Counted from the stretch's first letter, positions 11,800 to 58,634 are shown. The stretch is 64,000 nt of DNA from Zootoca vivipara (GCF_963506605.1 NC_083276.1:84630001-84694000); one strand, 5' to 3'. Program-made: numbers and translations. The notes: generated by a model from the sequence alone, not told the origin.

Positions 11800-12400
11800 C
11801 AGATCGCTTCATGCGGCCGCTCTCCCCTGGCCGTCATCTGCCTGACTGCCTCGCTTTTGTTTTATTGCAATGGCACCCGATGCTCCGAGAAACAAGCGGG
11901 CAGCAGGCAAGCCAGCAAGCAATCGTACCTCAGCGCTGGAGGAGGCTCCGTTCGGACTGCACCATGCTCCGCAGTTCCGCAGCCCCGCTCGCTTGGGACG
12001 CCAGTTTTTCGCCTCTCTCGCCTCCTGCTGCTGCGGCTGTCAAAGGAAGAGCGGAGGAGGGCCCCGGCCTGCAAGCCCCAGCTCGGCCCCGGGGACTGGC
12101 GCCGGCGCCGGCCAATGGAACGCGCGGCTCCATTGTGACGTCGGACCCTGCACTCTGAACCGGTGAGGTAAGGCGAGGCGGCCGCGGCCAACAGCTGCTC
12201 GAGGCTCCGGTGGAATTCTCTGGGGCGCGCTTGCGACGGGCGGCGCGTGGAGCCCCCTCCCGGCCCCACGCGGATGTGCGCTGCGACTCTGGTACGCCGA
12301 TGAACGCCCTTGTGGGTGGAAACATCTCGCAGCATCACAGGCTGCAACGCGTGCAGGACGCACTCTTACCTGGGAGTAAGGCTCGTCGAACTCCCTGGGG
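11800..12400 (-). promoter_or_regulatory. CpG-island promoter and probable non-coding first exon of copy 1
   Basis: GC/CpG-rich; CCAAT at 12112-12116; CRE-like TGACGTCG at 12136-12143; candidate minus-strand donor GAG|gtacga with exon end at 11929. Confidence 0.7.
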
Positions 12401-12520
12401 CTGACTTCAGAGTAGACACGTCTAGGGTTACACTGTCAGGCAGCCCTGGGTCTCAGGTTGCAGCTTTTCTGTCTGAACCTGATGCTCAGTGCTACATGAA
12501 TTTCATTCCCACTAGTGTTC

Positions 12521-12523
<3 letters not shown>

Positions 12524-12568
<45 letters not shown>
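12524..12568. repeat. (AAT)n microsatellite
   Basis: Direct observation. Confidence 0.95.
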
Positions 12569-12569
<1 letters not shown>

Positions 12570-12701
12570 TAAAAATCCTTCTGTACTAGTGCCACATTAC
12601 CATCCCTCTCTGCATAAAGAGTAGCAGACTGTTAAGTATTTTATTTTTCTAAACAACAAAAATACCCATGAAAAGAAAAACAGATTTAACAGCAAACCAC
12701 A

Positions 12702-13012
12702 GTTAAACCACAGAGCCTAGGGCTTGCCAACTGATTGGTGGTTCGAAACCCCAAGATGGGGTGAGCTCCTGCTGCTCAGTCCCTGCTCCTGCCAACCTAG
12801 CATTTCGAAAGCACATCAAAGTGCAAGTAGATAAATAGGTACCGCTCTGGCGGGAAGGTATACAGTGTTTCCGTGCGCTGTTCTGGTTCACCAGAAGCGG
12901 CTTAGTCATGCTGGCCACATGACTCCCTCAGCCAATAATGTGAGATGAGCCCCACAACCCCAGAGTCATCTGCGACTGGACCTAACGGTCAGGGGTCCCT
13001 TTACCTTTACCT
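12702..13012 (+). mobile_element. Sauria SINE
   Basis: tRNA-like head with ggttcgaaaccc B-box and (acctt)n tail. Confidence 0.85.
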
Positions 13013-13490
13013 AATATAAATACAACACAAGGAGCTTTCAATGATCAAGTCAAAAGATTAAAAACAAATCATGAGTAAATGAACTGGTTGCAATTGTGAA
13101 ATTATAAAATGGTAAAATTATAAACAATGTATAAAAGCACAAGTTACCTCACACAACAAATGAAATGGGGGGTCTTGCCTGTTTGCAGACAAGCTGCAAA
13201 CACAACATTTTCCTTTTACAAAGGAGAGGAAAGCAAAATGTTTGGCACCAGCTTGGCTGCAGGAGTTGCCAGGAGGAGGTGTACAAGACACCATCCAACA
13301 GTCTTAGGGACTCTACTCCAGATTTGTGTAGGGTTTACTCTTTAGCCTTTCCTTCTCCAAGATATGTCCCACGAGGCAGCCTCATAAAGAGCCTAGTAAA
13401 GGTAATTGCCCTAATATGGATGCTCCATGGGTGGGTGGGTGATAATCTCCAGATTTGTATTACACCATAAATTTCTTGTTTTAGAAACAA

Positions 13491-14429: not shown

Positions 14430-14431
<2 letters not shown>

Positions 14432-14474: not shown

Positions 14475-14478
<4 letters not shown>

Positions 14479-16104
14479 ACACTCACCCCCAATGCATGGA
14501 AGCCGCAAAAAGGAGTGCTTTCCTGGTGAATACCCAAAGAAATAAAAAATTACTGGATGCATGGGGAATTCCATGTTCTTACAGTAATCCAGAAAAATTG
14601 GTAAGGCTGTGTGTGCATCAAATCAATAGGACAGTGTCAGGGTAGAGGTTTAAATAATCATCCTGACCTGTTTTTTTTTAATTGCTTATGCTTAATGCTT
14701 AGCAATGCTAAATTGGATTATATTTAAAAAACTAGCATATGCAAATAGGTTGTTGTCTTTCTCTCTGTGTGTGAGAATAGTGGTCAATGTTGAGAGACTG
14801 TGACTGTGTCATTACCTGGCAAGTCTGCATATGTTTTTTTGCAAAGGGTAGAAACTTGCTTATTTTAAAACCAATGAAATGGGAGGGGGGGGATGACAGG
14901 GTGTCCTAAGGTGCTATGGGGGGGGACCAGAGTCTGCTCTTGCTGCCATGTTCCGAACTTTGTGGTGAGATCCTAACAGTTTATATATTTATAAAAGCAG
15001 CGCCCCATCACAGGACCTATGCAGTGGGATATTAATCTGTGTGGGTGTCCTGCTTCTAAGAACTGCCTCCAGGTTGCTCGCCCTACTAGCATACACCTTT
15101 TCCAGGTGCCATTATCTTCACTCAAGGGTATGATGCAGAGCAGGTGTTAACCACAACTCGTTCAACAGCTTGATCTTTTGCTGACATGATGCACCATCCA
15201 TCACGTATGTATCTGGTGGGGCAGCCTTTCTCAGTGTCTCCAGGCAATGATGGAAAGGTGATTGGCATCTCTACATGTGCAAAACACCTGCCTTGCTACT
15301 GAATCTTTGTAACCTGCTCCCATGCATCTGGACTAGAGGCTGTGGCTTTCAGCTAGGCTTGAACATCTCCCTTCCTCACTAAGAACACTGAATAGTAAGT
15401 GAGCTGTAGGGTAGAAGGCTGCCCTTTGTTCTTAAGACAGGATTTTGGTCCCTTCTAGCTCTTTGTAACTTTACAAGCCAGTAATATGGTGGCGGGGGAA
15501 GAGGACGAACCCTAGAGATGGTCCATCTATCAGGCAACCACGGCTGTTTGAAGCTCCTCCACTCTTTGCTGGTTTGACTGGTTTTCCTCACCAACACACT
15601 TTCAATTAGGCTGCACCCAGAAAAACCAAATTCTGACATCAGAATAAATTATTTGGCGCTGGTAGGATGCCTCAAAGTGGTCACTTGACATCATAATGAC
15701 TGGCTCAATTACTTATTGAATTTGTACCCTGCCCTTCATTCCCAAGGAGCCCAGGGCTCAAAGCTGGTCTGTGGGCGAAGTAAGGATCCATTCTACAAGC
15801 TAGATCTAATTCCCCAAGCCTGAATTATGCAAATGAAGTGCATGTAGTAAAATCATTAATGTTTTCATGATACATTGCTTTCTTAAGACTTTTTTTTTAA
15901 AAAAATTATGTAATACATAAACGGTTTTAAATAAAATAAGTGCACACCTCTGAGCTTGGCAGTTCAGGCAGAGCCAGGCGGTTCCTGGGCTGGGGTACCC
16001 TGCTCGCCCCCCTCTCAGGGGAATAATGCCACTGTGGAGACCAACAGCCAGGCTGTGACCTTTATTGGACACGGGAGCATTCTTCTCTTGCATGTCGGTG
16101 GGGC

Positions 16105-16646
16105 TCAGAGGACAGTGCACATGATGGATTCCCTCTCCCTGTGGGAAGGGATAATGTCGGGGAAGACATACCGCATGTCATTGAGGACCGAGTCATTCTC
16201 TTCAGGGGCCGCCGGCAAGGCGAGCTGCTGCTTCTCCGGTTCTTCAGTGCAGCCTCTGCCCTTTGGGCCTTCTGCTGGCTTGTCTTCCTTTGTGCTGTCT
16301 CCTGCACCCGGGCTCCTGGCTCTAATGGGAAAGGGAGCACCCGCCACTTCCTCGCTGAGCCCTGGCGTCCTTTTGTGTGCCCGCCAAGTGCCGCCTCGCC
16401 TCTTCCTGGAGCTGTCTCGGGCGGCGCCTGCCAGGTGCTGCTGCCCCAAGGTCTCCATCTCAGACAGGCTGTAGGCCAGGGTGGCCCGATGCAGCTCCTT
16501 GTCTTCGTCGTCAGGGTGGGCGCAAGAGAACCCTGCGCTCTGTGGGCGTGGCGGAGTCGGGATGTCCGTAGCAGACGAGCGCAGGATCTCGCGTTGCTCT
16601 GGCTGGATGAGCTCCACCGTGGCCTTCATGTCATTGTTGGTGAGGT
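16105..16646 (-). CDS. copy 2, terminal exon (UIM-like region and CaaX)
   Basis: Part of ORF 16105..16698 after the ctcctccag acceptor; [19 protein letters not shown]; ends CTVL-stop. Confidence 0.88.
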
Positions 16647-19600
16647 CTGGAGGAGGAGAACAGAGCAAGGGGTGGGGAAGCAGCTCCTTCAGCATCACTC
16701 ACTCTGTGGGCCCAGCATCCCTGAGGCTCAAAGGGGCTTTGCGTTCTGCCCCAGCATGCAGCAGTGTCATTTGGATAGGAAGGAGAGACAATGGGAGCAG
16801 GGGCAGGACACCTGAGAGAGCAACATAGAATGAATGGGAAGCCCCTTCAGCAGCCCTGAATCAAGGAGGACCCACTGCCAATGTGAAAAGAATATCCTGT
16901 CCTCATTGGATTTCTCTGCTTATTTTAATGTGGGAGAAACATGGACCAATTCAAGCCTGGGCCCAAATAGTCTTAATCCTTGCACAGCTGCTAATGGGCG
17001 ATGAGGTACAATGGATGCCTTTATTACTCCAGGGACTGCTCAGCCTAGAGTGAGCCATAGTGCTGCTGTTCCTCCTCCTCCTCCTCCTCCTCCTCAACGT
17101 AGGCTCAGTGTCACCCATTGGCTCTGACAGTCACAGTAAGCACCAGTCACCACTGAGTGAGATGCAGGCCAAGACCCCCATCTTCCCTTCTAGATGTGTG
17201 TCGAACTCTAGTGCCCTCCGAGTTTGATTTCTTACCACACACTTCTTCCACTTTGAGCTCCCCGTCCGCGTCAATCTCCATTCTCTCCTGCCCATTCTCA
17301 AGGATCCTGCAAAAGAGGCCTGACAGTTTATCCAGCACTTGCCACATTGCATTCTGGTCAAGCGTGCGCTGCCGCCACGCCACACCCCACACCCCACACC
17401 CCAACAGCCACACAACAGAGGCATTCTCAGTGACTTCTTTCCTAAACTCCCTCCTGCTAGAAGCTCAGCACAATCCAAACCTGAGCATTGCTCAGAAGCA
17501 CTGTAAGACTTAGGACAAAGTTAACACAGAGTGTATATTTTTATCGTCAACTCTGTGAGAATGTTTTGCTTCATTTTTTTCCTGCCTTAACAGTTTTTAA
17601 TAACATAAGCACAGCATGGGGGCTAGTTATATATCTAAACAAATAAACTGATTGATTGGAAAACTACTGGTAGCAAGCAGGAAACAATTGACAAGATCTA
17701 CTCCACAGGGGTAGGAGTTATTACCGGTAGTTTCCGGTATTGTTATCATCAGTGATATGAATGCAAGAGTGAGAAGAGCAATCGTCAGATGTGCAGGGGA
17801 TGGAGTAGAATTGCAAGGAATCCAAAGGACAAGCTACACATTCAAAATTATCTTAATAAAAACGAGAATTGGTCAAGAGGAACAAAATGAAATTAAGCAA
17901 GGGCAAATCTGAAACGTTACAGCAAGGATAATTCTTTATTTGCAGTACTGTGTCGAGGCTTGGACACTAAAGGTTTTTAAACCCACACCAGTTCATAAAT
18001 GAACTGTAAGAAGATAAAAGGTTAAACCAGGCATCCCCAAACTGCGGCCCTCCAGATGTTTTTGCCTAGAACTCCCATGATCCCTAGCTAACAGGACCAG
18101 TGGTCGGGGAAGATGGGAATTGTAGTCCAAAACATCTGGAGGGCCGAAGTTTGGGGGTGCCTGGGTTAAACAATCTGAGCAAAGGATCAGCCTACAGATT
18201 AAGGAAGGACAATATACTGGTCGTTTTTAATAGTATTAAAAAAATCTCAGAAGGTGATCAGGTAGGTGGACAGGGCAAAAATACGTAATCGAAGGAAAGC
18301 AGTTTTAGGTTAAACATAAGGAAGAATTTCCCATTTGTAAGAGCATTTCATCACACATGAAATGCTTTTGAAGGGCTCTTCTATTGCATTATTTGCACAA
18401 CACATGAATTTGGGTTAATGAAGGACAGGTAATAGAAAAGGAACATACATTCTAAGTTGAAACAAAATGCCAAATGATGGTTTGGCAAAGTCCTGAACTC
18501 ACAAACTCCCTCTTCCCCCTTCGCTCTCCATTCTCCTTTTGCATAATTTGCTTTAGTGAGTTGTTTCTGTTCTTGCAAAAAATGATAGTTTGCCATTACA
18601 TCTGATTGGGGGGCAGGCTAACTTGCGTGTGCCTGGCCCCTCCTTGTCACCTCACCTCCTGGTGGTTATCCGTTTGCCGTTGATGTACTTAGTAGATGTG
18701 GAGACAGAGCAGAAGCCTATTCCTAATTCAGCACCAGGCCCAAACGTAGTGAAGAAATCTAGGAGGGGAAAGTGACAACATCACTGCTAAGGGGGGTGGA
18801 GGCAGCTAGCGCAGGCCTCAATAATCCCAGCCAAACGGCAGACGCCTTCCCATACTGCGAGTGTCAGTGGGCTAATGAAGGGAGGCACCAACACTTAACA
18901 GGAGAATTGTTCCTTGGACATTTAAAAGCAGGGGTGAATTGAGTCCTTGTGAGATGAAAGAGCCAGAATGAGGTAGAGAAGCAGATATGGAAGAGGGAAA
19001 GTGTATTGGAGAAGCACAGAGGCAAGGCCTGCAATGAGCATGTGCAGCAGATCGCCCACTGAGCTGCTCAAGGCTGCAAGGTGATGAATCCTTGCCTTAC
19101 CTGTCTGGAATGGAGAGCTGTAGGAGCAATAGGAGTAGGTGGTGCAGCCTGGCGCAACCCACTGGGGTATTCCTCCTTGAAGAGCTGTATATGGGGACAA
19201 CTCCTCTGGAAAGGAAGGAGGAGGCTGATAAGTGAGAGACTTTCCAGTTAGACATTATAACCCAGATAATACAAGGACATGTTCAGTTTGGTTGCTTGGT
19301 GCAATGAGCCTAAGCAGATCAGGTAATATAATGCAATACAAATCCATGATCATACCATACCCCAAGACACAGAGAGGATGTCTTATGTGACATGCACCCC
19401 TCCAGCAAGGGCGAGGACAGAGCAGAAAGATTGCAGCCAAGATAGACCTGGAAGTTGGAACCTTCCCCCTGTCCTCGTCTCCGACAAAGCACAAAAAAGA
19501 AAAGCCCTGTGGATCATGGTAGCGGATATAATCCACTGCTGTGGTGGCTGATTCATTAGGGTGAACAGAACACTGCTCTGAGCTCAGGCTCAGACTGGGA

Positions 19601-25600: not shown

Positions 25601-25710
25601 GGGTCCATGTAACATCTTGTGGTTGGTGCACAATGTGCTACTTACGCCTTCTTAATGTCATCTGAGGAGGCAGTTTGAGGGATGTCCAGTGTTTGGTAGT
25701 AATCAACCAT
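16105..25710 (-). CDS. DNAJB2-like paralog (copy 2), 8 coding exons, 390 aa, ends in CaaX (CTVL)
   Basis: Exons 25710-25646 (65), 22451-22342 (110), 21509-21450 (60), 20597-20481 (117), 19205-19101 (105), 18758-18656 (103), 17306-17236 (71) and 16646-16105 (542) total 1173 nt in an open frame. Motifs: [54 protein letters not shown]. Confidence 0.9.
17236..17306 (-). CDS. copy 2, CTD exon
   Basis: [24 protein letters not shown], 71 nt. Confidence 0.9.
18028..18163. mobile_element. 136-bp hAT-type MITE
   Basis: caggcatccccaaact TIR, 8-bp TSD ggttaaac. Confidence 0.85.
18656..18758 (-). CDS. copy 2, S/T-CTD exon
   Basis: [34 protein letters not shown], 103 nt. Confidence 0.88.
19101..19205 (-). 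CDS. copy 2, coding exon 5
   Basis: [35 protein letters not shown], 105 nt, strong acceptor and gtaagg donor. Confidence 0.8.
20481..20597 (-). CDS. copy 2, G/F exon
   Basis: [39 protein letters not shown], 117 nt, gtatgt donor. Confidence 0.88.
21123..21316 (+). mobile_element. Bov-B/RTE LINE 3' fragment
   Basis: ggggtcacgaagagtcggacacgact and (caa)n tail; TSD atgctttcaggg. Confidence 0.88.
21450..21509 (-). CDS. copy 2, coding exon 3
   Basis: [20 protein letters not shown], 60 nt, GT-AG. Confidence 0.88.
22342..22451 (-). CDS. copy 2, HPD exon
   Basis: [36 protein letters not shown], 110 nt, GT-AG. Confidence 0.92.
23143..24493. mobile_element. 1351-bp GC-rich non-autonomous Tc1/mariner-pogo element, copy A
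   Basis: TIR ccgtgtttcccctttttt and aaaaaaggggaaacacgg, TA TSD, internal imperfect tandem repeats, no transposase. Confidence 0.85.
25646..25710 (-). CDS. copy 2, first coding exon
   Basis: [22 protein letters not shown], gtaagt donor; acceptor tttacag with exon start at 25738. Confidence 0.9.
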
Positions 25711-26011
25711 GATGCAGCTTGTTTAGTGCAGAGGCCAGCTGTAAATCAGGGGAGAACATGGTAGGACATTGATCATCCTCCAGTCAGGCTTCCACACTCA
25801 CCCACTCCAGCTCTCAGAAGCACTCAGCTGATGCCAGATGCAAAACACCTTCTGCTGAAAAAATACCTAATACAAGATGTCTGTTCAAAACACAGTTTAG
25901 CTTTATGTGCAGCCACCACCATCCCATATCCCATATCCTCATAAATTGCAGGTGGCATGTGCTTTCACCTCAGGAGGACATTGCTGACCAACTCCCTTGT
26001 TCTACACTATA

Positions 26012-26253
26012 CAGTGGTACCTCAGGTTACAGACACTTCGGGTTACAAACACTTCAGGTTACAGACTTCACTGACCCGGAGGTAGTACCTCGGGTTAAGA
26101 ACATCACCTCAGGATGAGAACAGAAATCGTGTGGTAGCGACGTGGCAGCAGCAGGAGGCCCCATTAGCTAAAGTGGTACCTCAGGTTAAGAACGGTTTCA
26201 GGTTAAGAACGGACCTTCAGAACAAATTAAGTTCGTAACCAGAGGTACCACTG
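26012..26253. mobile_element. Tigger/mariner-type MITE
   Basis: cagtggtacctc TIRs, TA TSD; truncated relative at ~27850-28027. Confidence 0.8.
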
Positions 26254-27256: not shown

Positions 27257-27398
27257 CTGCAAAAGCCTCTGTTTCTGCCTCTGGCTGCCTTGGACATAGG
27301 AAAGGACAGCAGGACCTCTCCATCATCCTTTTGCATCTACCCTCTCTTGATGAACATATACTGCAGCCAATGGCAGTCTTCTGCAGATTGTGATGTCA
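27257..27398 (-). promoter_or_regulatory. copy 2 promoter module and probable 5'UTR exon
   Basis: CCAAT at 27367, TGATGTCA at 27391 (same 24-nt offset as copy 1); candidate donor CAG|gtatga with exon end at 27257. Confidence 0.6.
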
Positions 27399-30374: not shown

Positions 30375-30560
30375 TATCAGGTTACACTAAGACCTCCTAA
30401 TGGCTGATCTCCCATCTCTTCAATAATGAAACCTGAATAAAACCTGGATAATAGCCCCTTAAGGTGGTGCCAGAGACAGTGGAATCACCCACCTGTATAC
30501 TTTGTAATTAAGTCTTTAATCATGCTTCCCACTAGTTTTCCCAGAATAGATGTTAAGCTA

Positions 30561-30907
30561 AAGGTAAAGGGCCCCCTGACCATTAGGTTCAGTCGTGACC
30601 GACTCTGGGGTTGCGCACTCATCTCGCGTTATTGGCCGAGGGAGCTGGAGTACAGCTTCCAGGTCATGTGGCCAGCATGACAAAGCCGCTTCTGGCAAAC
30701 CAGAGCAGCACACGGAAACGCCGTTTACCTTTGCACCGGAGCGGTACCTATTTATTTACTTGCACTTTGACGTGCTTTTGAAGTGCTACGTTGACAGGAG
30801 CTGGGACCGAGCAACAGGAGCTCACCCCGTTGCAGGGATTCGAACCGCCGACCTTCTGATCAGCAAACCCTAGGCTCTGTGGTTTAACACAGCACCACCT
30901 GCGTCCC
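30561..30907 (-). mobile_element. Full-length Sauria SINE
   Basis: TSD gatgttaagcta (30549-30560 and 30909-30920). Confidence 0.9.
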
Positions 30908-39967: not shown

Positions 39968-40979
39968 TATATTTCTGCAACTCAAAATCAAACACATTGC
40001 CAACCTTAAAGAAGGAAAAATGCTTACTTCATTGACTTCTGAAGGTATTAGAATTCAGTGCTTCCTCATTGCCCCAACATAACAAATCCCCATTCCTAGC
40101 CATTAAAAGTATATACAGTCGTACCTCGGGTTGCGAACAACTCGGGTTGCGAACAACTCGGGTTACGAACTGCGCACCCCCGGAAGTGTTTTCGCCGCGC
40201 GTGCGTGCGCACAAGCGTCGAGCGCGCTTTGCGCATGCGCAAAGCATGAAAATAGCTAAAATAGCGCTTTGCGCATGCGCGAAACGGTGGTTCGGGCCCT
40301 TTTCGGGTTACGAACTTTTCGGGTTACGAACTGCGACCCAGAACGGATCGCGTTCGTAACCCAAGGTACCACTGTATAAGTATACTTGTGTTCATAATAG
40401 GTGACTCAGGATTCAATGCTGGCTTCTCTTTTCAAAACAGCACATACTCTTTTGCTATCTCATCCACACAACCCATTCATTCATTCATCCATTCTCCCCC
40501 TCCTCTCTGTCCTATACACACAATGTAGCCTCCCCCTTCCCTAGCTGCATTTAGGCCTCACGAAACCTTCCTACTGGAGCCAACAGAAGGGTTTCTCCAG
40601 CCTAAATAAGTATGGCGCAAAGGCATTTTTTGCAAGGGGGAAGATTAACTTTCCCCTCCCTAGCTGTGACTCTGGCTTGAAAAGAAATCAATTAGGCTTG
40701 AAAACGAATCCTATTGGCTTCGGTAGGAAAGTCTCTTGAAGACTAAATGTGATGCTGGGGATGAGGAGGGAAGAATGGAGGCTGTGAGCTAGACAGGGCA
40801 GCCTCAAGGCTGGCGGTTCCTCGGGCGAAATGAATGCTCTGAAGGCTGACTTACGCCATTTTAATGTCGTGATGCGTTGCACCCTGGGGAATGCCCAGGA
40901 CTTCATAATAGTCCTTGTCATCTTTTGTCTGTCCTGTTGAGAGACTTGGAGGGACACTGGGGTGTCTTGGCTGACCCAT
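32542..40979 (-). CDS. Divergent DNAJB2-derived J-domain protein (copy 3), ~641 aa, with long charged low-complexity C-terminus
   Basis: Exons 40979-40855 (125; MGQPRH...[22 protein letters not shown]), 39296-39187 (110; [36 protein letters not shown]), 37541-37491 (51; [17 protein letters not shown]) and 34181-32542 (1640) total 1926 nt in frame; AATAAA at 32494-32489. The join to the terminal exon is inferred from phase and position. Confidence 0.75.
34304..34439. mobile_element. 136-bp hAT-type MITE
   Basis: TSD ctgtagtc. Confidence 0.85.
37491..37541 (-). CDS. copy 3, coding exon 3 (divergent helix IV)
   Basis: 51 nt, tctgcctttcag acceptor and AAG|gtgagt donor, phase 1-1. Confidence 0.65.
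38739..38874. mobile_element. 136-bp hAT-type MITE
   Basis: TSD ctgtagac. Confidence 0.85.
39187..39296 (-). CDS. copy 3, HPD exon (absent from the ORF track)
   Basis: 110 nt, gaacag acceptor and gtaagg donor, [10 protein letters not shown]. Confidence 0.9.
39575..39807. mobile_element. Short MITE related to the 1351-bp elements
   Basis: ccctgtttcccc and gaaacacgg ends, TA flanks, shared tgtcttattttc/ataagcc subterminal motifs. Confidence 0.7.
39924..39964. repeat. (AT)n microsatellite
   Basis: Direct observation. Confidence 0.95.
40116..40374. mobile_element. Tigger/mariner-type MITE, CpG-rich (young)
   Basis: cagtcgtacctcgggtt and aacccaaggtaccactg TIRs, TA TSD. Confidence 0.8.
40855..40979 (-). 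CDS. copy 3, first coding exon with N-terminal extension
   Basis: DYYEVLGIP motif, gtaagt donor; nearest in-frame ATG at 40979; acceptor ttctattctgcag with exon start at 41017. Confidence 0.75.
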
Positions 40980-42850: not shown

Positions 42851-42986
42851 CTCACAGTCTCAAAGGATTTTTCCTGATGATTGACACATCCTTTGGTATC
42901 TTCATTTTCCATGTAGGCAGAGCCCTAGTCACTCAGAGCTGCTGCCCGGGGTAAGAAAAGAGGAGCTTGATTGTGATGTCAGGGGC
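42851..42986 (-). promoter_or_regulatory. copy 3 promoter module and probable 5'UTR exon
   Basis: gattgtgatgtcagggg identical to the copy 2 promoter (TGATGTCA at 42974); CCAAT position degenerate; candidate donor GAG|gtaggg with exon end at 42851. Confidence 0.55.
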
Positions 42987-47813: not shown

Positions 47814-47852
<39 letters not shown>

Positions 47853-49467
47853 GTAAAGGTAAAGGGACCCCTGACCATTAGGTCCAGTCGTGACCGACTC
47901 TGGGGTTGCGGCACTCATCTCGCTCTGTTGGCCGAGGGAGCCGGCGTACAGCTTCCAGGTAATGTGGCCAGCATGACAAAGCCACTTCAAGCAAACCAGA
48001 GCAGCACACGGAAATGCCGTTTACCTTCCCGCCGGAGTGGTACTGGTACCTATTTATCTACTTGCACTTTGACGTGCCTTCGAACTGCTAGGTTGGCAGG
48101 GGCAGGGACCAAGCAACGGGAGCTCACCCCGTCGTGGGGATTCGAACCGCCGACCTTCTGATTGGCAAGTCCTAGGCTCTGTGGTTTAACCCACAGCGCC
48201 ACCCGTGTCCCTAATTAATATGGTCATGGTGGTCAAAAGGAAGAATTACAACAGTGAAATGTCAGATTTGAATTCTGCACTCTCCCAATTCACAGGCTAG
48301 GTTTATACAGCCCGTAAGTCTGTGGCGAGTGGTGGCTCCAGGTTCTGGTGACCCCTTGGGTGAGGGGGGCTCACTGAGGATCCCTCAGTGAGCCCCCCTC
48401 CTCACCAAGTCACTGTTGCCCACTTAGTTCTCTCCCTCTGGGCCCACCCTGATCATTTGTCCACAGCAGGGTTTCTAAAACTTGGTTCTCCAGTTGTTTT
48501 TTAACTACAACGCCCATCATCTCTAATTAGCAGGAACAGTGGTCAAGGCTTATGGGGAATTATAGTCTAAAAGTACCTAGAGACCCAAGTTTGGGAAACC
48601 ATGATGAAGAGGAAGCTGCTGTTCCATCTCCTTCCTCCTGTCACAGCATACTTGTAGAGCAGGGGTGTCAAACTCAAATTCATCGGGGGCCGCATCAGCA
48701 GTTTGGTCTCCCTCAAAGGGCCAGTTGTATCTGTAGGACTATGTGTCCACTCTTTATTATCATAAATTATTGTCACTGCATTCAATTATTACTGTTTTTT
48801 GTAATAATGTAAGTAATAACTAGCAGAAACATAGTCAGAATAATGGCAAGTAGATATTCAAATGTACAATTATTGTACAATTTATTGAAAAATGATTTTT
48901 GGTAACTGCACTGGGTGGTGGAGGCTCGCTAGGGTTTCATGCAGGACCTTTGCAGAGCTACTAGTACCTGGAGATGCTGGGGTCCTTCTGCATGCAGGAC
49001 AGATGTTCTGCCAGTGAGCCACCACCCTTCACCAAAGGGACTGGCTGAGGTTGACTCACTGGAGCTGCTCTCCTGGTTCCAGGGTTTAAGGGCCAGAAGT
49101 ATAAAGCAGCATNNNNNNNNNNNNNNNNNNNNNNNNNNNNNNNNNNNNNNNNNNNNNNNNNNNNNNNNNNNNNNNNNNNNNNNNNNNNNNNNNNNNNNNN
49201 NNNNNNNNNNNNNNNNNNNNNNNNNNNNNNNNNNNNNNNNNNNNNNNNNNNNNNNNNNNNNNNNNNNNNNNNNNNNNNNNNNNNNNNNNNNNNNNNNNAG
49301 AGAAAGAAGAGTAGGAAATAAGGAAGGGAATAAAGAAGGAAAGAAAAAGAAAGAGGGAGAGAAGACGGAAAGGGAGAAAGATGGAAGGAAGTAGAGGGAA
49401 AGAAAGAATAAGAATGAGGGAGAGGAAGAAAGTTGGGAAGGACGGAAGGACGGAAGGACGGAAGGAA

Positions 49468-52202: not shown

Positions 52203-52255
<53 letters not shown>

Positions 52256-55243
52256 TTATACCCCGCCCTCCCCAGTCAAAAACCGGGCTCAGGGCGGCTC
52301 ACACCAACAAAACCACAATAAAACATAAAAACAATTAATTAAAATACAGATTAAAATACAGTATTAAAATTTAAAATGCAGCCTCATTTCAAGTAGTCCA
52401 TAAATCCAGGCCATGAGGGAGGAAAACACAGGAGTCAGGCTAAGTCCAACCCAAAGGCCAGGCGGAACAGCTCTGTCTTGCAGGCCCTGCGGAAAGATGA
52501 CAAATCCTGCAGGGCCCTGGTCTCCTGGGAAAGAGCGTTCCACCAAGTTGGGGCCAATACTGAAAAGGCCCTGGCTCTAGTAGAGGCCAATCTAGCCATC
52601 TTATGGCTGGGGATCTCCAAAGTATTGTTGTTTGTGGACCTTAAGGTCCTCCGCGGGGCATACCAGGAGAGGCGGTCCCGTAGGTACAAGGGTCCCAAGC
52701 CGCATAGGGCTTTAAAGGTCAAAACCAGCACCTTAAACCTGATCCTGTACTCCACCGGGAGCCAGTGCAGCTGGTAAAGCACTGGATGAATGTGATCCCA
52801 CGGCCGGGACCCCGTAAGGAGCCTCGCCGCGGCATTCTGCACCTGCTGGAGTTTCTGGGTCAGTTTTAAGGGCAGCCCCGCGTAGAGCGAGTTACAATAA
52901 TCAAGCCTGGAGGTGACCGTCGCATGGATCACTGTGGCCAGATCAGGGCGAGAGAGGTAAGGGACCAACTGCTTAATACGGCGGAGATGGAAAAATGCCA
53001 CCTTTGCTGTGGATGCAACCTGCGCCTCCTTGGAAAGGGAGGCGTCGAAGGTTACACCCAAACTCTTGACAGAAGGCGCTGGCACTAATTGAGTCATCTT
53101 ATCATCTGTGACGAAGAAGATTTTTCCTGGACTGTCTGTCACTTACCTCTTCCCAGTAGCCCATCCTTACCCCAGCGGTCATAGATGTCACGTTTGTTCT
53201 CTGAAAAGGAGAAAGAATAAGAAGTCAACCAACCCGCCATCCAATCTCAGAGACAGTGGTTTCTAACAGCAATCTGGCATGCCATGCTGGATCTTGAATA
53301 ACAGGCGCATCACCTGGAAGCAGAAACCACTGTAGGCGCATATAGGCTGTCAGCATTTCACAGGAGGGATTCAAGCACATACAAGAACTTTAGGTTTGTG
53401 TGATTAAAAAAGATGAAAGGGCTCCATCACTCTACCAGCACAACAAATCCACTTGAGAAAAACCCGGACTTTTTGCAGTTAGGAGAGAGATGGGGAATTG
53501 CATTGAAAAGTATGAGATGAACGAAGGAGGAATGGACAGGTGTATCAAATGATGCATGGGCAGAATTGCCATATAACTGTCCCATAAACAAATTGGAACA
53601 AATGCTCAATAAAGACCAGACATAGTCTAACCACAGTGTAAGCTTTGTGCAAGCAAATCTGGATGGATGCTCAATAAATAGTCCATTTGGAGGAGCCCTG
53701 CTTCTGCCAGTGTTCTTCCAACGATAGCATGTAGTTTGAAACTTGAAAATGCATCTTTGCCACAAAATGACCAGGACAGATTAACCATTGTTAAAATCGT
53801 GTTTATGGAAGACAATCTTACTCGGCTACGAGTGATTACCAAAGAAGAAAGAAAGAAGAAAGAATACTTACTGTCTGAAAGTACTTGATAGGCTTCTGAA
53901 ATCTCCTTGAATCTCTGTTCTGCAAATTGCTTGTTTTCTGTGTTTTTATCTGGGTGCCACTTTAGAGCTTTCTTCCTGTATCTTTATGGTTCCCCAGAAA
54001 ACACAATGGATGATAAAAGTCAGTATCCCTGTGACCATTTCTACTACTACAGATTTGTGTATGGTTAGCCGTATTTTTCCTGACACCAGGGCAAGGAAGG
54101 GAGCAGACTCCTCCTGTCCCTAGTCTCCATTTCTTCCAGAAGCAAAAAAGACTTCAGCTTTCCCTCAGCAAGCTTCTCATTACTTCATGGCATGCACTAT
54201 GGCCATCCAAACCATACCGGTCTATCTCAGCTTATGTGAGGGCGTGTTCTATGAAACTCCTGTATAGATGGCACCACACACCAGGGCGAATTGCCCACAT
54301 GAAATTACAATCTTCTCAGAATTGTTGTGGGAAAAGAGACACCTTTTCGCACCTATGCTAAGACTTCCTACAGGTACTGTAGGTAGGTCATCAAGAAATG
54401 ACCAAAAAAGTCAGCTATCCCATTCCAACGTCACAACAGATTCTGTGGGACTATCAGCTGAAAGAGTTCAACTCTCAGGAACTTTTGACACGGATCTTGG
54501 TGGCTGCCAGAACTTAAAGGTGGCATTTTTTCATCTCCGCCAAGCTAAGCAGTTGGCTCCTTACCTCTCTCACCCTGACCTAGCCACTGTAATACACGCG
54601 ATAGTCACCTCCAGGTTTGATTATTGTAACTCACTCTACGTGGGGCTGCCCTTGAGACTGACCCAGAAACTCCAGCGGGTGCAGAATGCCGGGGTAAGAC
54701 TCCTTACGGGGTCCTCGCCGCGGGATCACATTCACCCTGTGCTATACCAGCTGCACTGGCTCCCGGTGGAGTACAGGATCAGGTATAAGGTGCTGGTTTT
54801 AACCTTTAAAGCCCTATACGACCAAGGACGCTCATACCTATAGGACCACCTCTCCTGGTATGTCCCACGGAGGGCCTTATGGTCTTCAAATAAAAACATC
54901 TTGGAGATCCCGGGCCACAGGGAGGTTAGGCTGGCCTCGACCAGAGCCAGGGCTTTTTCGGCCATGGTCCCGAGACTAGGGCCCTGCGGGACTTGACATC
55001 TTTCCGCAGGGCCTCCAAGACCGAGCTGTTCCGCCAGGCCTTTGGCCAAGGCAAAGTCTGACCCACTCTCTCCTTCTGTAATCCTCACAGAACTCTAACC
55101 CAATGGTTCCTATTAATTTGATTCTGAATTGATTTTAGAATGGATTTTAATTGACTGTGTGATTTTATGTACACTGTGCTATTTTTACTTGTTGTTAGCC
55201 ACTCTGAGCCCGGCTTTGGCTGGGAAGGGCGGGATACAAAAAA

Positions 55244-55274
<31 letters not shown>

Positions 55275-57202
55275 TGCCTCCCAAATGGAAAACCTTAAGG
55301 GTCTTGTATTAGCTGGAAAAAACCCCTCATAAATTACATGTTGGCAAATGCTTGGAGGATCCTGAAAATTTATATGCTGTTTGGTGGAGTTTTATTATAT
55401 ATACAACAAATACAGACACACTAAAAATAAAATAAAATAAAACCTGCTGTCAGGGAGTTGTTGCGGCTACTCCCGAGTAAAGTCCGTTTTGTCTGTGCAT
55501 ACTATTTACAGTGCAGAGATAGCAGAAAACATGACCTCCTAGTCACTCTCAGAACCCAGGAATGGCGCCCGTCGGCTTCAGGGTGACCATAATAATCTGG
55601 GCACCCCGAAACACCACCCCTTCACCCTGTGTTTGGGCATGTGCCTCAATTTGGGGGCCAGAAGGAGCGGTGCCCCTTCTTCCCCTGGCCAGTTGGGGCA
55701 GTGCCTGGCCTCCTACATCTCCCTGAGCCGTCCCTCCTCCACTTGTTGGTCAGAGTGGTGTAGGGGCTCTGATGCCTCGCTGAGCCTTCCCACCTCCATT
55801 CCACTTCCCCCTGACCCGCTGCTAGCGCTGTCACTGGGCGAAGTGCTGGTCAGGATGATGGGGGGAGGCTCCCTGTAGGGAGTCTCCCTGACACCTGCCC
55901 TCAGCAAGCCTCTCCCATAAGAGGAGTCAGGGAACCAGCCCAAAAATCAGACAGTGAGGCAACCCGGGCTGGCTCTAGGGGTAGGCTGGGTGGCGCGGTG
56001 CGCCAGGGCACTGGGCCAGCAGGGTGGGCGACGTGTGGCAAAGCTGCGTGGAAGCCGTGCTGTGCGCTCCCACCAGGGCGGGGGCACCGGAGCGATCTCC
56101 GCACCACGGCGCCAGGGCGCCCGACATGCTTGAGACGGCCCTGGAGGCAACCTAATAATATAGCGGTCTAGCAGTAGATTCTGTAGTACAAGGGTAGCAA
56201 AATGTGACTATTCTGTGGTATTATTCTTTCTTGTGGTAATATACAGTATTAAGAAGCGTGGCTTCCAAATGCATCATAGCTGCCAAGTTTTCCCTTTTCT
56301 CGCGAGGAAGCCTATTCAGCATAATGGAAAATCCCTTTAAAAAAGGGATAACTTGGCAGCTATGATGTTTGGGCTAAGGAATTCAGCAGAGTGAAGCAGC
56401 TGCTTCATGTAGAAAATGCTGGCTGGGGTGGGATGAAGAGTGGTGGCAAGGTTTTGGAGGACTGAGGTGCGCCAGGAACTGAATCCTTGCATAAGGTTTT
56501 AGCCCTGACATTGGAATAGGTTCTGAGACTAAACCCTAGTGAGCCTTGTATCAAATTTTCATGGTGAGAGATAGAACCAGGGTACTAGTGCTATCGCCTA
56601 ATTAAAGGAACTCTCAGCAGATTCAGGTGAGGTATGTGAACATTGCAGTAGGCATCCTTTTTAAGAAAATCCCAGAACAATGGGATTTGCTCAGTAAAGG
56701 ATTTGCAATACAGAAAGGGGAATCTTTCTTTTGTTGAGGTTGAAATTTAGTGTGGTGCTGTTGTTTTAAGTTGTGTTTTTTTAAAAAAATATATTCTTTT
56801 TTTGAAAAAACTGCTGCTTGATTTAGCAGGGCATGCTTTTCATCGATCATTTTTGTTGTTGCTGCTGTTGATCTGATCTAGCTGATTAATCAGTTACAGT
56901 AAATGTTGCAGCCTCCCCTAGACTGTGCCTAAACAGATGCCTGATCTCTAGAATAAAAAAATAACCGGCACCTATCGTGCTAGAGCCCAACTATCTCTTC
57001 CTTCCTTGACACCAAAAGTATAGCAAGAGGTGAAAGGTCCCTCCAGACCCCATATTGGCCGAGAGGCTGGGAGGGCAACGTCTCTCTTAAGAGCATGGAA
57101 GATGGTAATGGGGTGGACATGGGGAAGAGGCACTTACGCTTTCTTAATGTCATCCAAGGAAGCATTCTGGGGGAGACCCAGAGCTTCATAGTACTCGACC
57201 AT
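45796..57202 (-). CDS. DNAJB2-like paralog (copy 4), 7 coding exons, 256 aa, acidic tail without UIM or CaaX
   Basis: Exons 57202-57138 (65), 53981-53872 (110), 53200-53147 (54), 51441-51331 (111), 50370-50268 (103), 46931-46861 (71) and 46052-45796 (257) total 771 nt in frame. Motifs: [55 protein letters not shown] at 45355-45350. Confidence 0.87.
46081..46651. mobile_element. hAT-type non-autonomous element
   Basis: cagagcttttcaacc and ggttgaaaaccactg ends; TSD ggttagac/ggttagat. Confidence 0.7.
46861..46931 (-). CDS. copy 4, CTD exon
   Basis: [24 protein letters not shown], 71 nt. Confidence 0.92.
47853..48211 (-). mobile_element. Full-length Sauria SINE
   Basis: Matches the other copies; abuts the (tta)n tail of an L2-like 3' end at ~47700-47852. 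Confidence 0.88.
48660..49914. mobile_element. hAT-type element containing a purine-rich microsatellite and the assembly gap
   Basis: caggggtgtcaaac and gtttgacacccgtg ends; 8-bp TSD ttgtagag. Confidence 0.75.
49113..49298. other. Assembly gap (N run)
   Basis: 186 N bases. Confidence 1.
50268..50370 (-). CDS. copy 4, S/T-CTD exon
   Basis: [34 protein letters not shown], 103 nt, gtgagg donor. Confidence 0.87.
50909..51143 (+). mobile_element. Bov-B/RTE LINE 3' fragment
   Basis: [21 protein letters not shown]...RWLD C-terminus and (caa)n tail. Confidence 0.9.
51331..51441 (-). CDS. copy 4, G/F exon
   Basis: [37 protein letters not shown], 111 nt. Confidence 0.9.
51602..51737. mobile_element. 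136-bp hAT-type MITE
   Basis: TSD ttataggg. Confidence 0.85.
51957..53100 (-). mobile_element. 5'-truncated L2-clade LINE with duplicated 3' end
   Basis: ORF 52435..53142 ([13 protein letters not shown]...QNAAARLL...LHWLPV) is the L2 ORF2 C-terminus; (tta)n tail. Confidence 0.88.
53147..53200 (-). CDS. copy 4, coding exon 3
   Basis: [18 protein letters not shown], 54 nt, GT-AG. Confidence 0.9.
53872..53981 (-). CDS. copy 4, HPD exon
   Basis: [36 protein letters not shown], 110 nt; weak acceptor ggggaaccataaag. Confidence 0.9.
54516..55272 (+). mobile_element. 5'-truncated L2-clade LINE
   Basis: Same L2 motifs in ORF 54268..54843 with a premature stop; (tta)n tail. Confidence 0.88.
55448..55893. 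mobile_element. Solo LTR
   Basis: tgtcagggag...ctccctgaca ends (TG..CA) with 5-bp TSD cctgc. Confidence 0.75.
56276..56363. mobile_element. Tiny MITE
   Basis: TIR catagctgccaagtt and aacttggcagctatg. Confidence 0.6.
57138..57202 (-). CDS. copy 4, first coding exon
   Basis: [22 protein letters not shown], gtaagt donor. Confidence 0.9.
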
Positions 57203-57690
57203 GGTGAATTGATGTTTCCAGCAGAACCAATGAGCAGGTTGTAAACACAGAAAAAGCAGCCAGGTGTTGTCTCTGGGTGTCAACCAATGTCTGTGGGTTC
57301 TCAACTGAGGTTAGAGGTGGTCATGGCCGTCCACCAGGCTGGGTAACCCGATGCGGAGTAGCAAAAGGCAGTGGTGTGGACAGTTGACCCTACAGCACAT
57401 GGAAGAGAACTTATACCAGCGGGGTGTACATTAGCATCTCCCAAATCACAAAGAAAAGGCAGTTGTGGAAGAAGGAGAGCTACATACTTTTATACATTTT
57501 TGTCATTTTCCTAGACTCATATAACGCCAAACTGCCTTTATATAAGCTGAAGATAGTAGCAAAACTACAAGCATTAGGGTTCTTAGCTGTTCAACTCTAG
57601 TTTGTCTCTCCCCCCCCCCTTAGTTTGTGCTATCTTGGTATCCTTACCTCCATAGACTTAAATGTGTCGTAAAATGCCAGTAGCTATGCA

Positions 57691-57875
57691 GGGAAGGGCC
57701 ACAGCTCAGTGGTAGAGCCTGTGCTTTTCACGTGGAAAGTTCAATCCCAGGCATCTCCAAGTAGGCCTGAGAATGTCCGCTCTCTGGAACCCTGCCGTGT
57801 TGCTGCCAGTCAGTGTATGCAACAGGGAGCTAGATGGACTATTGGTCTGACTCAGTATAAGGCAGTTTTCTATGA
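57691..57875 (+). mobile_element. Degenerate tRNA-derived SINE
   Basis: agctcagtggtagagc A-box and gttcaatccc B-box; ctgactcagtataaggcag 3' motif. Confidence 0.65.
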
Positions 57876-58429
57876 TCCCAGAGGTTTTGCTCCTGTGTGA
57901 AAGCTGGTTGATCTATTCCCGTTAGTGTAACTATCACCCATTTCAGAAAATTTCATTGCCATGAACTATAAGCGGCTGATCTACTGTGAAAAGTTTAATC
58001 TGGAGCAGGGAGGGGGGAACCTGGAGCCCTTTAGATGCTGAACTCCAGGGCGCTCAGCTGTCGCCAGCATGGTCAAACAGGGATGGTGGGAGTTGGAGTC
58101 ATACAATATCTGAAGTGCCACACAGGTTCTCCACCCCAGTTCTAGAATTTAGAGATGTATGTGTGGTTCTAACTGGTACAACTCACTTTGAAAGCTGAAG
58201 CAGAAAAAAACTGCCAGGCTGGACCAGAACCTCATAGCCCCATGTGATTTGTCTTTGCCAAGGAATAGTATCAAGGGCCCCAGAAGAATGGAAAGACCTC
58301 CGCTCTTGGCAAGTGTAAAAGAACATTCTTTGTTTAAGGACAGCGTCACCGCTCTACTACGTTTCCTTTTTCTCACAGTGACCTACCCGCTGTAAACCGC
58401 CACCCCATTCGCAACCTGACCAGGCCTAC

Positions 58430-58634
58430 CTTATTGTGAAAGAATGAACTGTCCTGGCTGCATGGTGGGCACAGTTCTAAGGTCTTGCAGGTGTCCGTTC
58501 ACACCTGCACAGGCCCAGTTGCTGCCAGATGGGAAGGGACAGGGAAAGGAACTCTGCAGCAACCTAGCATCCAATTCCGTTGCTGATTAGCAGCAGCAGC
58601 AGCCAATGGGATGCTCCAGCCGATTATGATGTCA
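58430..58634 (-). promoter_or_regulatory. copy 4 promoter module and probable 5'UTR exon
   Basis: CCAAT at 58603, TGATGTCA at 58627 (24-nt offset); candidate donor AAG|gtaggc with exon end at 58430. Confidence 0.6.

What the first reader, a model, noticed from the sequence alone, without database searches (positions are those of the whole stretch)
12112..58634. The same CCAAT + CRE promoter cassette sits upstream of each copy, with CpG decay in the paralogs
Seen on the + strand: copy 1 ccaatgg-N17-tgacgtcg (12112/12136), copy 2 ccaatgg-N17-tgatgtca (27367/27391) and copy 4 ccaatgg-N17-tgatgtca (58603/58627), all with an identical 24-nt offset. Copy 3 keeps gattgtgatgtcagggg (17/17 identical to copy 2, CRE at 42974) but has lost CCAAT. 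Each has ATT[GA] directly before the CRE and a plausible minus-strand donor 120-210 nt downstream (11929, 27257, 42851, 58430). Only copy 1 lies in a CpG island. Established: CpG-free CRE variants are typical of CREM-tau-driven post-meiotic germ-cell promoters. Inference: whole genes were duplicated with their promoters, and copies 2-4 became tissue-restricted, possibly to testis like mammalian DNAJB3/7/8.
Basis: partly seen in the sequence, partly recalled or inferred. Interest (0 to 1): 0.8.

Follow-up and report, generated by a model that had tools for sequence, protein, structure and literature searches.

The report
Shared CCAAT–CRE promoter core, lizard DNAJB2 paralogs
Four tandem DNAJB2-like chaperone genes in the common lizard carry the same short pair of transcription-factor sites (a CCAAT box and a cAMP-response-like site) upstream; this is a real, anciently retained promoter core of an ordinary kind, but neither its use as a start site nor the proposed testis role could be shown.

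Summary
CCAATGG-N17-TGAYGTCR occurs exactly three times in the window, at 12112, 27367 and 58603, against 0.01 expected. Each match lies upstream of a minus-strand DNAJB2-like gene. Copy 3 keeps only a 17-mer identical to copy 2, at 42969, and has no CCAAT. Only copy 1 sits in a CpG island (about 11000-12400).

The window is Zootoca vivipara. The duplicates are old: copy 3 has orthologues in snakes, iguanians, cordylids and amphisbaenians, and dS between copies is about 0.8 to above 3. Yet copies 2 and 4 are 69% identical from the CRE to a shared splice donor, and only 27% identical just upstream of the CRE. That indicates a constrained proximal promoter plus a 5'UTR exon.

TGATGTCA is a published, lower-affinity "TG-variant" CRE. 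It arises by methyl-CpG deamination and is typical of promoters outside CpG islands, so the pattern is a known one.

Not shown:
- No start site was mapped.
- The one read-laying run found no RNA on copy 2's exon 1 or first coding exon. No positive control was laid.
- The tool for fetching other species' loci was closed, so conservation in other species is untested.
- The testis/CREM-tau idea has no support here.
- Copy 4's donor is more likely at 58505 than at 58430.
- The N gap is intronic and irrelevant to the cassettes.

This is a new member of a known kind, of modest interest.

The parts
12112..12143 (-). Copy 1 cassette: CCAAT box (GGCCAATGG, 12112-12118) and a CRE-like octamer TGACGTCG (12136-12143). 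This is 7 of 8 of the canonical CRE, with an intact CGTCA half-site. In gene orientation the CRE is distal and the inverted CCAAT box is proximal.
11000..12400 (.). CpG island of copy 1 (GC 0.56-0.70, CpG observed/expected 0.85-1.18). The cassette lies near its gene-upstream edge.
11929..12111 (-). Putative non-coding exon 1 of copy 1, ending at donor GAG|GTACGA (last exon base 11929). No start site was mapped.
   Evidence: sequence reading only
6827..6892 (-). Copy 1 first coding exon ([22 protein letters not shown]). The J-domain HPD exon is at 4823-4936, and further exons run at about 3565 and to the left edge of the window.
27257..27398 (-). Copy 2 conserved block: TG-variant CRE TGATGTCA (27391-27398), CCAAT box AGCCAATGG (27367-27373), a 5'UTR-like stretch, and donor CAG|GTATGA (last exon base 27257).
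25645..25710 (-). Copy 2 first coding exon ([22 protein letters not shown]), preceded by acceptor TTTACAG. Other exons: J at 22337-22453, G/F at about 20553, CTD at about 17299, terminal exon at 16105-16698.
42969..42985 (-). Copy 3 remnant: a 17-mer GATTGTGATGTCAGGGG identical to copy 2, containing TGATGTCA (42974-42981). There is no CCAAT box at the homologous position.
40854..40979 (-). Copy 3 first coding exon as in NCBI's model P0003 (ATG at 40979). Its N-terminal extension MGQPRHPSV... is conserved in other squamates. J exon at 39185-39295; terminal 545-codon exon at 32545-34179.
58505..58634 (-). Copy 4 conserved block: TGATGTCA (58627-58634), CCAAT box AGCCAATGG (58603-58609), a 5'UTR-like stretch, and donor CAG|GTGTGA (last exon base 58505) homologous to copy 2's donor.
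57137..57202 (-). Copy 4 first coding exon ([22 protein letters not shown]). The ancestral acceptor TTTACAG reads TTTACAA here. Other exons: 53864-53983, 53142-53216, 51335-51433, 50267-50356, 46856-46942.
49113..49298 (.). Assembly gap. It lies in the copy-4 intron between the ...ITTKR exon and the IVEDGQER exon and abuts an AGAA-type microsatellite. It is not part of any cassette and was not filled or looked up.

Best explanation
The cassette is the retained core of the ancestral DNAJB2 proximal promoter. It was copied with the gene in ancient tandem duplications in the squamate lineage.

In gene (minus-strand) orientation it reads: CRE-type bZIP site, then CAAT, then 13 variable nt, then an inverted CCAAT box of good NF-Y consensus, then about 100-180 nt of non-coding exon 1, then a splice donor.

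Inferred mechanism. NF-Y on the CCAAT box opens and positions a TATA-less promoter. A CREB/ATF/CREM-class bZIP dimer binds 24 nt further upstream and supplies activation. Transcription starts a few tens of nt downstream of the CCAAT box and runs toward lower coordinates.

The parental copy 1 keeps an unmethylated CpG island and a CpG-containing CRE. Copies 2-4 lost the island and carry the TG variant TGATGTCA. That variant has lower affinity, but it has no CpG, so methylation cannot silence it. Its identity in three old paralogs suggests it is a conserved working state.

Copy 3 has lost the NF-Y site and may use another start.

Shown: the motifs, their spacing, their non-random occurrence, the copy 2-copy 4 homology bounded by the CRE and a donor, CpG status, and the age of the duplication. 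Inferred: factor identity, start-site position, and any expression pattern.
For: There are 3 exact cassette matches against 0.01 expected, all in the same orientation, each upstream of a paralog. The extended motif ATTRTGAYGTC is present at all four copies. All three CCAAT boxes are RRCCAATGG. The copy 2-copy 4 local alignment has z = 16.8: 92 of 134 positions are identical between the CRE and a shared donor TGCAG|GTRTGAA, against 6 of 22 immediately upstream of the CRE. Apart from repeats, BLASTN finds no other DNA similarity between the copies except the J exon. dS between copies is 0.8 to above 3. Copy-3 orthologues exist across snakes, iguanians, lacertids, an amphisbaenian and a cordylid, so neutral sequence should be randomised by now. 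Conservation extends only on the minus-strand-downstream side, which fits the gene's direction. Copy 1's cassette lies at the upstream edge of a 1.4-kb CpG island. Published work supports the rest: TGATGTCA is a functional lower-affinity CRE variant produced by methyl-CpG deamination, is biased to -1..-150 of start sites in vertebrates, and lies mostly outside CpG islands (PMC1796609); ATF1/7, CREM, FOS and JUN co-localise with NF-Y-bound CCAAT boxes (PMC7793273).
Against: No start site was mapped. Three raw RNA-seq runs (about 6% of each was read) and one contig set gave zero depth on copy 2's cassette, exon 1 and first coding exon; everything that was laid was repeat fragments. Copy 1 matches the paralogs only in the motifs themselves (z about 0.4-2.3). 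Copy 3's evidence is a single 17-mer, and its annotated ATG exon lies 2 kb downstream of it. Copy 4's exon-2 acceptor AG is lost, and ATTGG and TATAAG motifs lie just upstream of its ATG exon, so a nearer start is possible. TGATGTCA is somewhat frequent in the window generally, with 9 sites against 2.5 expected.
Confidence: 0.62

Rival explanations
1. The cassette is a promoter relic. It is truly homologous (inherited by duplication) and is the working promoter only for copy 1. In copies 2-4 it no longer drives transcription, and those genes start nearer their first coding exons or are barely expressed.
For: No RNA on copy 2's predicted exon 1 or first coding exon. NCBI's copy-3 model begins at 40979 with an N-terminal extension conserved in other squamates. 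Copy 4's ancestral acceptor reads AA instead of AG, and ATTGG and TATAAG motifs lie just upstream of its ATG exon. Copy 3 has lost the CCAAT box.
Against: With dS above 1 between the copies, a relic without function should not keep 69% identity over about 150 nt, with sharp boundaries at the CRE and at a splice donor. It should also not keep an exact 17-mer in copy 3.
Confidence: 0.17
2. The conserved element is regulatory, but the octamer is read by something other than CREB/CREM. Candidates are another bZIP pair such as ATF/C-EBP-type heterodimers using the adjacent ATTG, or a TALE homeodomain complex that cooperates with NF-Y.
For: ATT[GA] directly abutting the octamer is conserved in all four copies, so the recognised site is longer than a CRE. 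The paralog form has lost the CpG that strong CREB binding needs (PMC1796609). NF-Y is known to form fixed-geometry composites with TALE factors and to pair selectively with bZIPs.
Against: Copy 1 has a plain CGTCA half-site. The DECA motif is not matched (about 5 of 10 positions by eye), and the spacing is 17 nt rather than 11. TGATGTCA is documented as a working CRE variant.
Confidence: 0.14
3. One reading: copies 2-4 are testis or post-meiotic genes driven by CREM-tau through CpG-free CREs, by analogy with mammalian DNAJB3/7/8.
For: CpG-poor promoters tend to be tissue-restricted, and young or divergent paralogs are often testis-biased (general knowledge). CREM is among the bZIPs that co-localise with NF-Y. 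No reads on copy 2 in three RNA runs of unknown tissue is compatible with restricted expression.
Against: There are no tissue data at all. The premise called 'established' was not found in a CREM review. The TG variant is a general CRE form outside CpG islands. From my own knowledge, untested here, mammalian DNAJB3/7/8 are intronless copies related to DNAJB6, whereas these are intron-containing tandem DNAJB2 copies.
Confidence: 0.15
4. The similarity comes from a dispersed repeat, from gene conversion, or from chance.
For: The window holds several repeat families, including a SINE-like element near each promoter at 12702, 30559, 47852 and 61771, and a 99.9% identical 1.36-kb duplicate.
Against: The cassette and its flanks are not part of any self-BLAST repeat. 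There are only 3 matches, each at the homologous place. At 69% identity the copy 2-copy 4 block is not a recent conversion tract, and neighbouring exons have dS above 1. Genome-wide copy number could not be checked.
Confidence: 0.03

Closest known systems
Canonical CRE versus its 'TG-variant' TGATGTCA (Smith et al. 2007, PMC1796609)
   Same: The CpG-island copy has the CpG form and the copies outside an island have exactly TGATGTCA. The site lies close upstream of the presumed start. The CG-to-TG switch is the commonest difference between homologous CREs.
   Different: The paper compares orthologues in mammals; here the switch is between ancient paralogs in a lizard. Copy 1's octamer is TGACGTCG, not the full palindrome.
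NF-Y CCAAT-box promoters with a neighbouring bZIP site (NF-Y regulome, PMC7793273). From memory, untested here: the CRE-CCAAT pairs of the cyclin A2 and fibronectin promoters.
   Same: A CCAAT box with RRCCAATSR flanks next to a CRE/TRE-type site at a fixed distance in a TATA-less, CpG-island promoter.
   Different: The 17-nt gap (24-nt offset) is not one of the spacings named in the passages I read, which report a TRE 10-12 bp 5' of CCAAT. No binding data exist for this locus.
DECA-CCAAT composite read by PBX/PREP, NF-Y and Sp2 (bioRxiv 10.64898/2026.02.16.706105)
   Same: A fixed-geometry composite of a CCAAT box with a TGAT-containing site.
   Different: The DECA decamer is not matched, the spacing is 17 nt rather than 11, and copy 1 is plainly CRE-like.
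Promoter divergence of gene duplicates (Fraimovitch and Hagai 2023, PMC10100218)
   Same: Promoter sequence similarity is almost entirely lost between old paralogs. There is an asymmetry between a parent copy in a CpG island and duplicates without one.
   Different: Here a short core survives despite saturated divergence. That study covers mammals and reports CpG-island depletion mainly for retrocopies.
DNAJB2 (HSJ1), an Hsp70 co-chaperone
   Same: Copy 1's J-domain exon is closest to the human DNAJB2 J domain among solved structures. G/F, Ser/Thr-rich and CTD exons are present. Copy 2's terminal exon contains a UIM-like ...[11 protein letters not shown]... stretch (the resemblance is from memory).
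   Different: This is a squamate tandem array of four to five copies with divergent tails. Pfam did not call a UIM.

Membership tests
NF-Y-type CCAAT box in a proximal promoter | CCAAT pentamer with favourable flanks (RRCCAATSR; consensus from my own knowledge) | tested here: met
   GGCCAATGG in copy 1 and AGCCAATGG in copies 2 and 4. Not met in copy 3, which has no CCAAT at the homologous position.
NF-Y-type CCAAT box in a proximal promoter | Position about 60-100 nt upstream of the transcription start | not testable with these tools
   No start site was mapped. The only read-laying run gave zero depth over copy 2's cassette and exon 1. The distance from the CCAAT box to the presumed exon-1 donor is 98-183 nt.
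NF-Y-type CCAAT box in a proximal promoter | Occupancy by NF-YA/B/C | not testable with these tools
   Needs ChIP or EMSA.
cAMP response element (canonical or TG variant) | Octamer TGACGTCA or its documented variant TGATGTCA | tested here: met
   Copies 2, 3 and 4 have exactly TGATGTCA. Copy 1 has TGACGTCG, 7 of 8 with an intact CGTCA half-site. Variant status per PMC1796609.
cAMP response element (canonical or TG variant) | The CG form lies in CpG islands and the TG form mostly outside them | tested here: met
   CpG observed/expected is 0.93 for copy 1 against 0.04-0.27 for copies 2-4. Table 3 of PMC1796609.
cAMP response element (canonical or TG variant) | Within about 150 nt upstream of the start site and bound by CREB/ATF1/CREM | not testable with these tools
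   No start-site or binding data.
CREM-tau-dependent post-meiotic testis promoter | Testis- or spermatid-restricted transcription | tested here: inconclusive
   Copy 2's 5' exons had no reads in 3 RNA runs. The tissues are coded or unknown, and no positive control was laid.
   Not stated in the CREM review, which describes TGACGTCA and half-sites. TGATGTCA is described as a general variant outside CpG islands.
DECA-CCAAT (TALE/NF-Y/Sp2) composite | A PBX/PREP decamer 11 bp from the CCAAT box | tested here: not met
   The gap is 17 nt, and the octamer plus flank does not match the decamer (decamer consensus from my own knowledge).
DNAJB2-type class B J-protein genes | J domain with HPD, closest to DNAJB2, followed by G/F and C-terminal exons | tested here: met
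   HPD exons in all four copies. The best solved-structure match is DNAJB2 2lgw, E = 1.1e-17, narrowly ahead of DNAJB8 and DNAJB6. G/F and CTD exons are present in copies 2 and 4; the G/F exon of copy 1 is at the window edge. Copy 3 has only the J domain plus a new tail.
Dispersed repeat / transposable element | Multiple copies unrelated to gene position | tested here: not met
   Within the window there are only the gene-associated copies, and no self-BLAST repeat covers them. The genome-wide count was not testable.

The most novel reading that the evidence does not exclude
The TG-variant CRE plus NF-Y cassette is not a decaying relic. It is a methylation-proof version of the parental DNAJB2 promoter, kept under selection since before the main squamate radiation in three paralogs without CpG islands, and it gives them a restricted (perhaps germ-line) expression programme. 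That would make the array a natural experiment on how a housekeeping CpG-island promoter is converted into tissue-specific promoters while keeping the same two factor sites.
Probability: 0.2. Interest if true: 0.5.

Novelty: new member of a known kind. Interest (0 to 1): 0.3.

Why it matters
If the cassette is the working promoter in all copies, the locus is a clean example of promoter inheritance and re-tuning after tandem duplication. The same NF-Y and bZIP sites sit at the same spacing, but the CpG island is lost and the CRE is switched to its CpG-free variant. That would help annotate the 5' ends of a squamate-specific family of Hsp70 co-chaperones with novel tails. It would also give a compact reporter-testable pair (CG versus TG octamer in an otherwise conserved context). 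It does not change what is known about CREs, NF-Y or J-proteins.

Tried and rejected
1. RNA support. The look-up of sequencing runs was run on copy 2's 3' half and read laying on 24500-28990 with X1 and X10-X12. Only repeat fragments were laid, with zero depth on the cassette, exon 1 and the first coding exon. X1's 12% word share was therefore probably repeats. Both tools are capped at one call, so no positive control (copy 1) and no other copy could be laid.

2. Cross-species footprinting. The other collections (viral, metagenome, prokaryotic genomes, phage, plasmid, E. coli) cannot hold lizard loci, so I did not scan them.

3. A search with copy 2's terminal exon found only two short Logan ORFs. 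Full-length relatives fall outside the tool's length limits.

Exons were handled one by one by reference.

5. The DECA-CCAAT (TALE/NF-Y) reading was considered and rejected on motif and spacing.

6. A coding reading of the copy 2-copy 4 conserved block was considered. Each copy has a short upstream ATG that stays open to the donor, but the two differ in length by 2 nt, so no conserved peptide results (reading).

7. Pfam did not detect a UIM in copy 2's tail.

8. The bacterial promoter scan is irrelevant to a vertebrate locus.

9. The large HMMER representative search and the third word search were not used, because the proteins' identity was not in question.

Full report
**What is there.**
The window carries a head-to-tail array of DNAJB2-like J-protein genes, all on the minus strand. 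HPD-containing J-domain exons lie at 4823-4936, 22337-22453, 39185-39295 and 53864-53983. The first coding exons (M-V-D/E-Y-Y...IKKA) lie at 6827-6892, 25645-25710, 40854-40919 (extended to an ATG at 40979 in NCBI's model) and 57137-57202.

Copy 1's J exon is closest to the human DNAJB2 J domain among solved structures, narrowly ahead of DNAJB8 and DNAJB6. Copies 2 and 4 keep G/F, Ser/Thr-rich and C-terminal-domain exons. Copy 3 is a J domain spliced to a 545-codon low-complexity exon.

A search with that exon returned a 100% match to Zootoca vivipara LOC118082318. It also returned orthologues (35-88% identity over at least 95% of the query) in Podarcis, Lacerta, Rhineura, Phrynosoma, Hemicordylus, Pogona, two Anolis species, Phrynocephalus, Python, Crotalus and Pantherophis. 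So the window is the common lizard, and at least the copy-3 duplication predates the split of scincoid, lacertoid, iguanian and snake lineages.

**The assembly gap.**
N 49113-49298 is the only gap. It lies between copy 4's ...ITTKR exon (50267-50356) and its IVEDGQER exon (46856-46942). These are adjacent coding segments in this family, so the gap is intronic. Its right side is an AGAA-type microsatellite. It is 6-9 kb from the nearest cassette. I did not try to fill it or test continuity across it, and nothing below depends on it.

**Checking the observation.**
- CCAATGG-N17-TGAYGTCR has exactly three matches, all on the + strand, against 0.01 expected.
- CCAATGG alone is not enriched: 12 matches against 15.9 expected. 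TGAYGTCA is mildly enriched: 9 against 2.5. The signal is therefore in the combination and its placement.
- ATT[GA] abuts all four octamers: 5 matches to ATTRTGAYGTC against 0.07 expected. The fifth match, at 15687, is in the opposite orientation, has no CCAAT box, and lies just beyond copy 2's last exon.
- The 17-mer shared by copies 2 and 3 is unique to those two places, even allowing three mismatches.
- Copy 3 has no CCAAT at the homologous spot.
- CpG observed/expected within 250 nt of the octamer is 0.93, 0.04, 0.08 and 0.27 for copies 1-4. Copy 1's island runs from about 11000 to 12400, with the cassette near its gene-upstream edge.

**Is it paralogous promoter sequence?**
At ordinary BLASTN sensitivity, the only co-linear similarity between the copies is the J exon, plus exon 2 for copies 2 and 4. 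Synonymous divergence in the two J-domain exons is about 0.8 to above 3 for every pair. Neutral DNA is therefore saturated.

Against that background, a local alignment of 500 nt around the octamers gives z = 16.8 for copy 2 against copy 4. The aligned block starts exactly at the octamer. It runs through the CAAT, the inverted CCAAT box and about 100 nt more, and ends at a shared donor TGCAG|GTRTGAA. That is 92 of 134 aligned positions identical, against 6 of 22 just upstream of the octamer. A block bounded by a factor site and a splice donor is what a proximal promoter plus a non-coding first exon looks like.

Copy 1 resembles the others only in the motifs themselves (z 0.4-2.3), but at identical spacing and orientation. 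Copy 3 shares only the 17-mer. Conservation extends on the minus-strand-downstream side only, which matches the genes' direction.

**What the literature adds.**
- Smith et al. (PMC1796609) describe TGATGTCA as the "TG-variant" CRE. It is produced by deamination of the methylated central CpG, is functional but of lower affinity, and is the only variant besides the canonical CRE with a significant bias to -1..-150 of vertebrate start sites. It interchanges with the canonical form between orthologues and lies mostly outside CpG islands: 17% of TG:TG pairs are in islands, against 80% of CG:CG pairs. The pattern in this window is the same rule seen between paralogs.
- The NF-Y regulome analysis (PMC7793273) lists ATF1/7, CREM, FOS and JUN among bZIPs that share promoters with NF-Y-bound CCAAT boxes. 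A CCAAT-plus-CRE module is therefore a familiar architecture.
- The DECA-CCAAT composite of TALE factors, NF-Y and Sp2 needs an 11-bp spacer and a different decamer, so it does not fit.
- A CREM review (PMC10454534) speaks of TGACGTCA and half-sites.
- Work on promoters of mammalian duplicates (PMC10100218) reports that promoter similarity is lost quickly with duplicate age, which is why the surviving core is informative.
- No paper mentioning both DNAJB2 and squamates was found.

**Attempts at direct evidence.**
The single run search listed genomic runs of the same species, three raw RNA-seq runs of 2026, and some contig sets. Tissues are not given.

The single laying call covered copy 2 from its first coding exon to 1.6 kb upstream of the cassette. 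About 7.5 million records per raw run were read, about 6% of each. The bins holding the first coding exon (25550-25849) and the cassette with exon 1 (27200-27499) had zero depth in all four runs. Nearly all laid reads ran on into unlike sequence, that is, they were repeat fragments.

This neither supports nor refutes a promoter. Because I could not lay copy 1 as a control, it also says nothing firm about tissue restriction.

**Caveats on individual copies.**
- Copy 3: NCBI's model starts at ATG 40979. The N-terminal extension MG(Q/L)PRHPS... recurs in Podarcis, Rhineura, Phrynosoma, Anolis and Python models. The ATG exon was thus extended upstream of the ancestral acceptor. Whether a 5'UTR exon near 42851-42960 is still used is unknown.
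- Copy 4: the acceptor that reads TTTACAG in copy 2 reads TTTACAA, and there is no AG between it and the ATG. Other AGs lie 30-50 nt upstream, as do two ATTGG motifs and a TATAAG. Copy 4 may therefore use a shifted acceptor or a nearer start.

**Most likely mechanism (inferred).**
NF-Y binds the inverted CCAAT box, and a CREB/ATF/CREM-class dimer binds the octamer 24 nt upstream. Together they drive a TATA-less promoter that starts shortly downstream and splices a short non-coding exon onto the ATG exon.

The parental gene keeps a CpG island and a CpG-containing site. The paralogs sit in CpG-poor, presumably methylated DNA and carry the CpG-free variant, which binds more weakly but cannot be blocked by methylation. 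All three paralogs carry the change on the same strand and have kept it since before squamate lineages split. It therefore looks like a conserved state, perhaps inherited from one ancestral duplicate, rather than continuing decay.

My estimates:
- about 0.85 that the cassette is truly homologous and constrained;
- about 0.6 that it is the working proximal promoter in copies 1, 2 and 4;
- about 0.15 that the testis/CREM-tau reading is right.

**Verdict.**
This is a real, well-observed feature, and it is a new instance of known kinds: an NF-Y/CRE promoter core, and CG-to-TG CRE switching with CpG-island loss. The expression inference is unsupported.

Noticed in passing
window 23138-24495 and 29019-30376: A 1358-bp segment is duplicated at 99.9% identity. 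One copy lies in copy 2's intron and the other 1.6 kb upstream of copy 2's cassette. It is GC-rich (0.62-0.66) with internal tandem units of about 115 nt (23682-24309). It could be a very recent duplication, a young element or an assembly artefact.
   Followed up: no
window 57233-57245: Copy 4's first-coding-exon acceptor is TTTACAA where copy 2 has TTTACAG, and there is no AG between it and the ATG. ATTGG motifs at about 57228 and 57284 and a TATAAG at about 57411 lie just upstream, hinting at a shifted acceptor or an alternative start.
   Followed up: partly
window 40920-40979: Copy 3's ATG exon is extended 5' past the ancestral acceptor (CAACAG|G). It adds [20 protein letters not shown], an extension also present in the models of other squamates.
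   Followed up: partly
window 15634-15697: Two TGACATCA octamers lie 52 nt apart on the + strand, the second followed by TAAT. That is the copy-4 form of the extended motif, in the opposite orientation and without a CCAAT box. They lie just beyond copy 2's last coding exon.
   Followed up: partly
window 12160-12175: Directly after copy 1's octamer the + strand reads CCGGTGAGGTAAGG, a good + strand donor inside the CpG island. This may reflect divergent (bidirectional) transcription.
   Followed up: no
window 21123-21317 and 50948-51142: A 195-bp segment is 98.5% identical between an intron of copy 2 and an intron of copy 4, far above the divergence of the surrounding DNA. It may be a young repeat insertion or a conversion tract.
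   Followed up: no
window 12702-13022, 30559-30911, 47852-48215, 61771-62124 (also 6243-6389): A SINE-like repeat of about 350 bp occurs once in each intergenic or upstream region. The copies at 30559 and 61773 lie at a similar distance (about 3.15 kb) upstream of the copy 2 and copy 4 cassettes and are 90.6% identical.
   Followed up: no
window 27275-27335 and 58505-58570: Each presumed exon 1 of copies 2 and 4 contains an upstream ATG that stays open to the donor. The two differ in length by 2 nt, so no conserved peptide is implied; they may be uORFs (reading).
   Followed up: no
window 46856-46942: Copy 4's CTD exon reads ...VNGKVQK and then a stop if it is not spliced, while AAG|GTAC at the same place could act as a donor. 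This suggests short and long isoforms, as I recall for DNAJB2 and DNAJB6.
   Followed up: no
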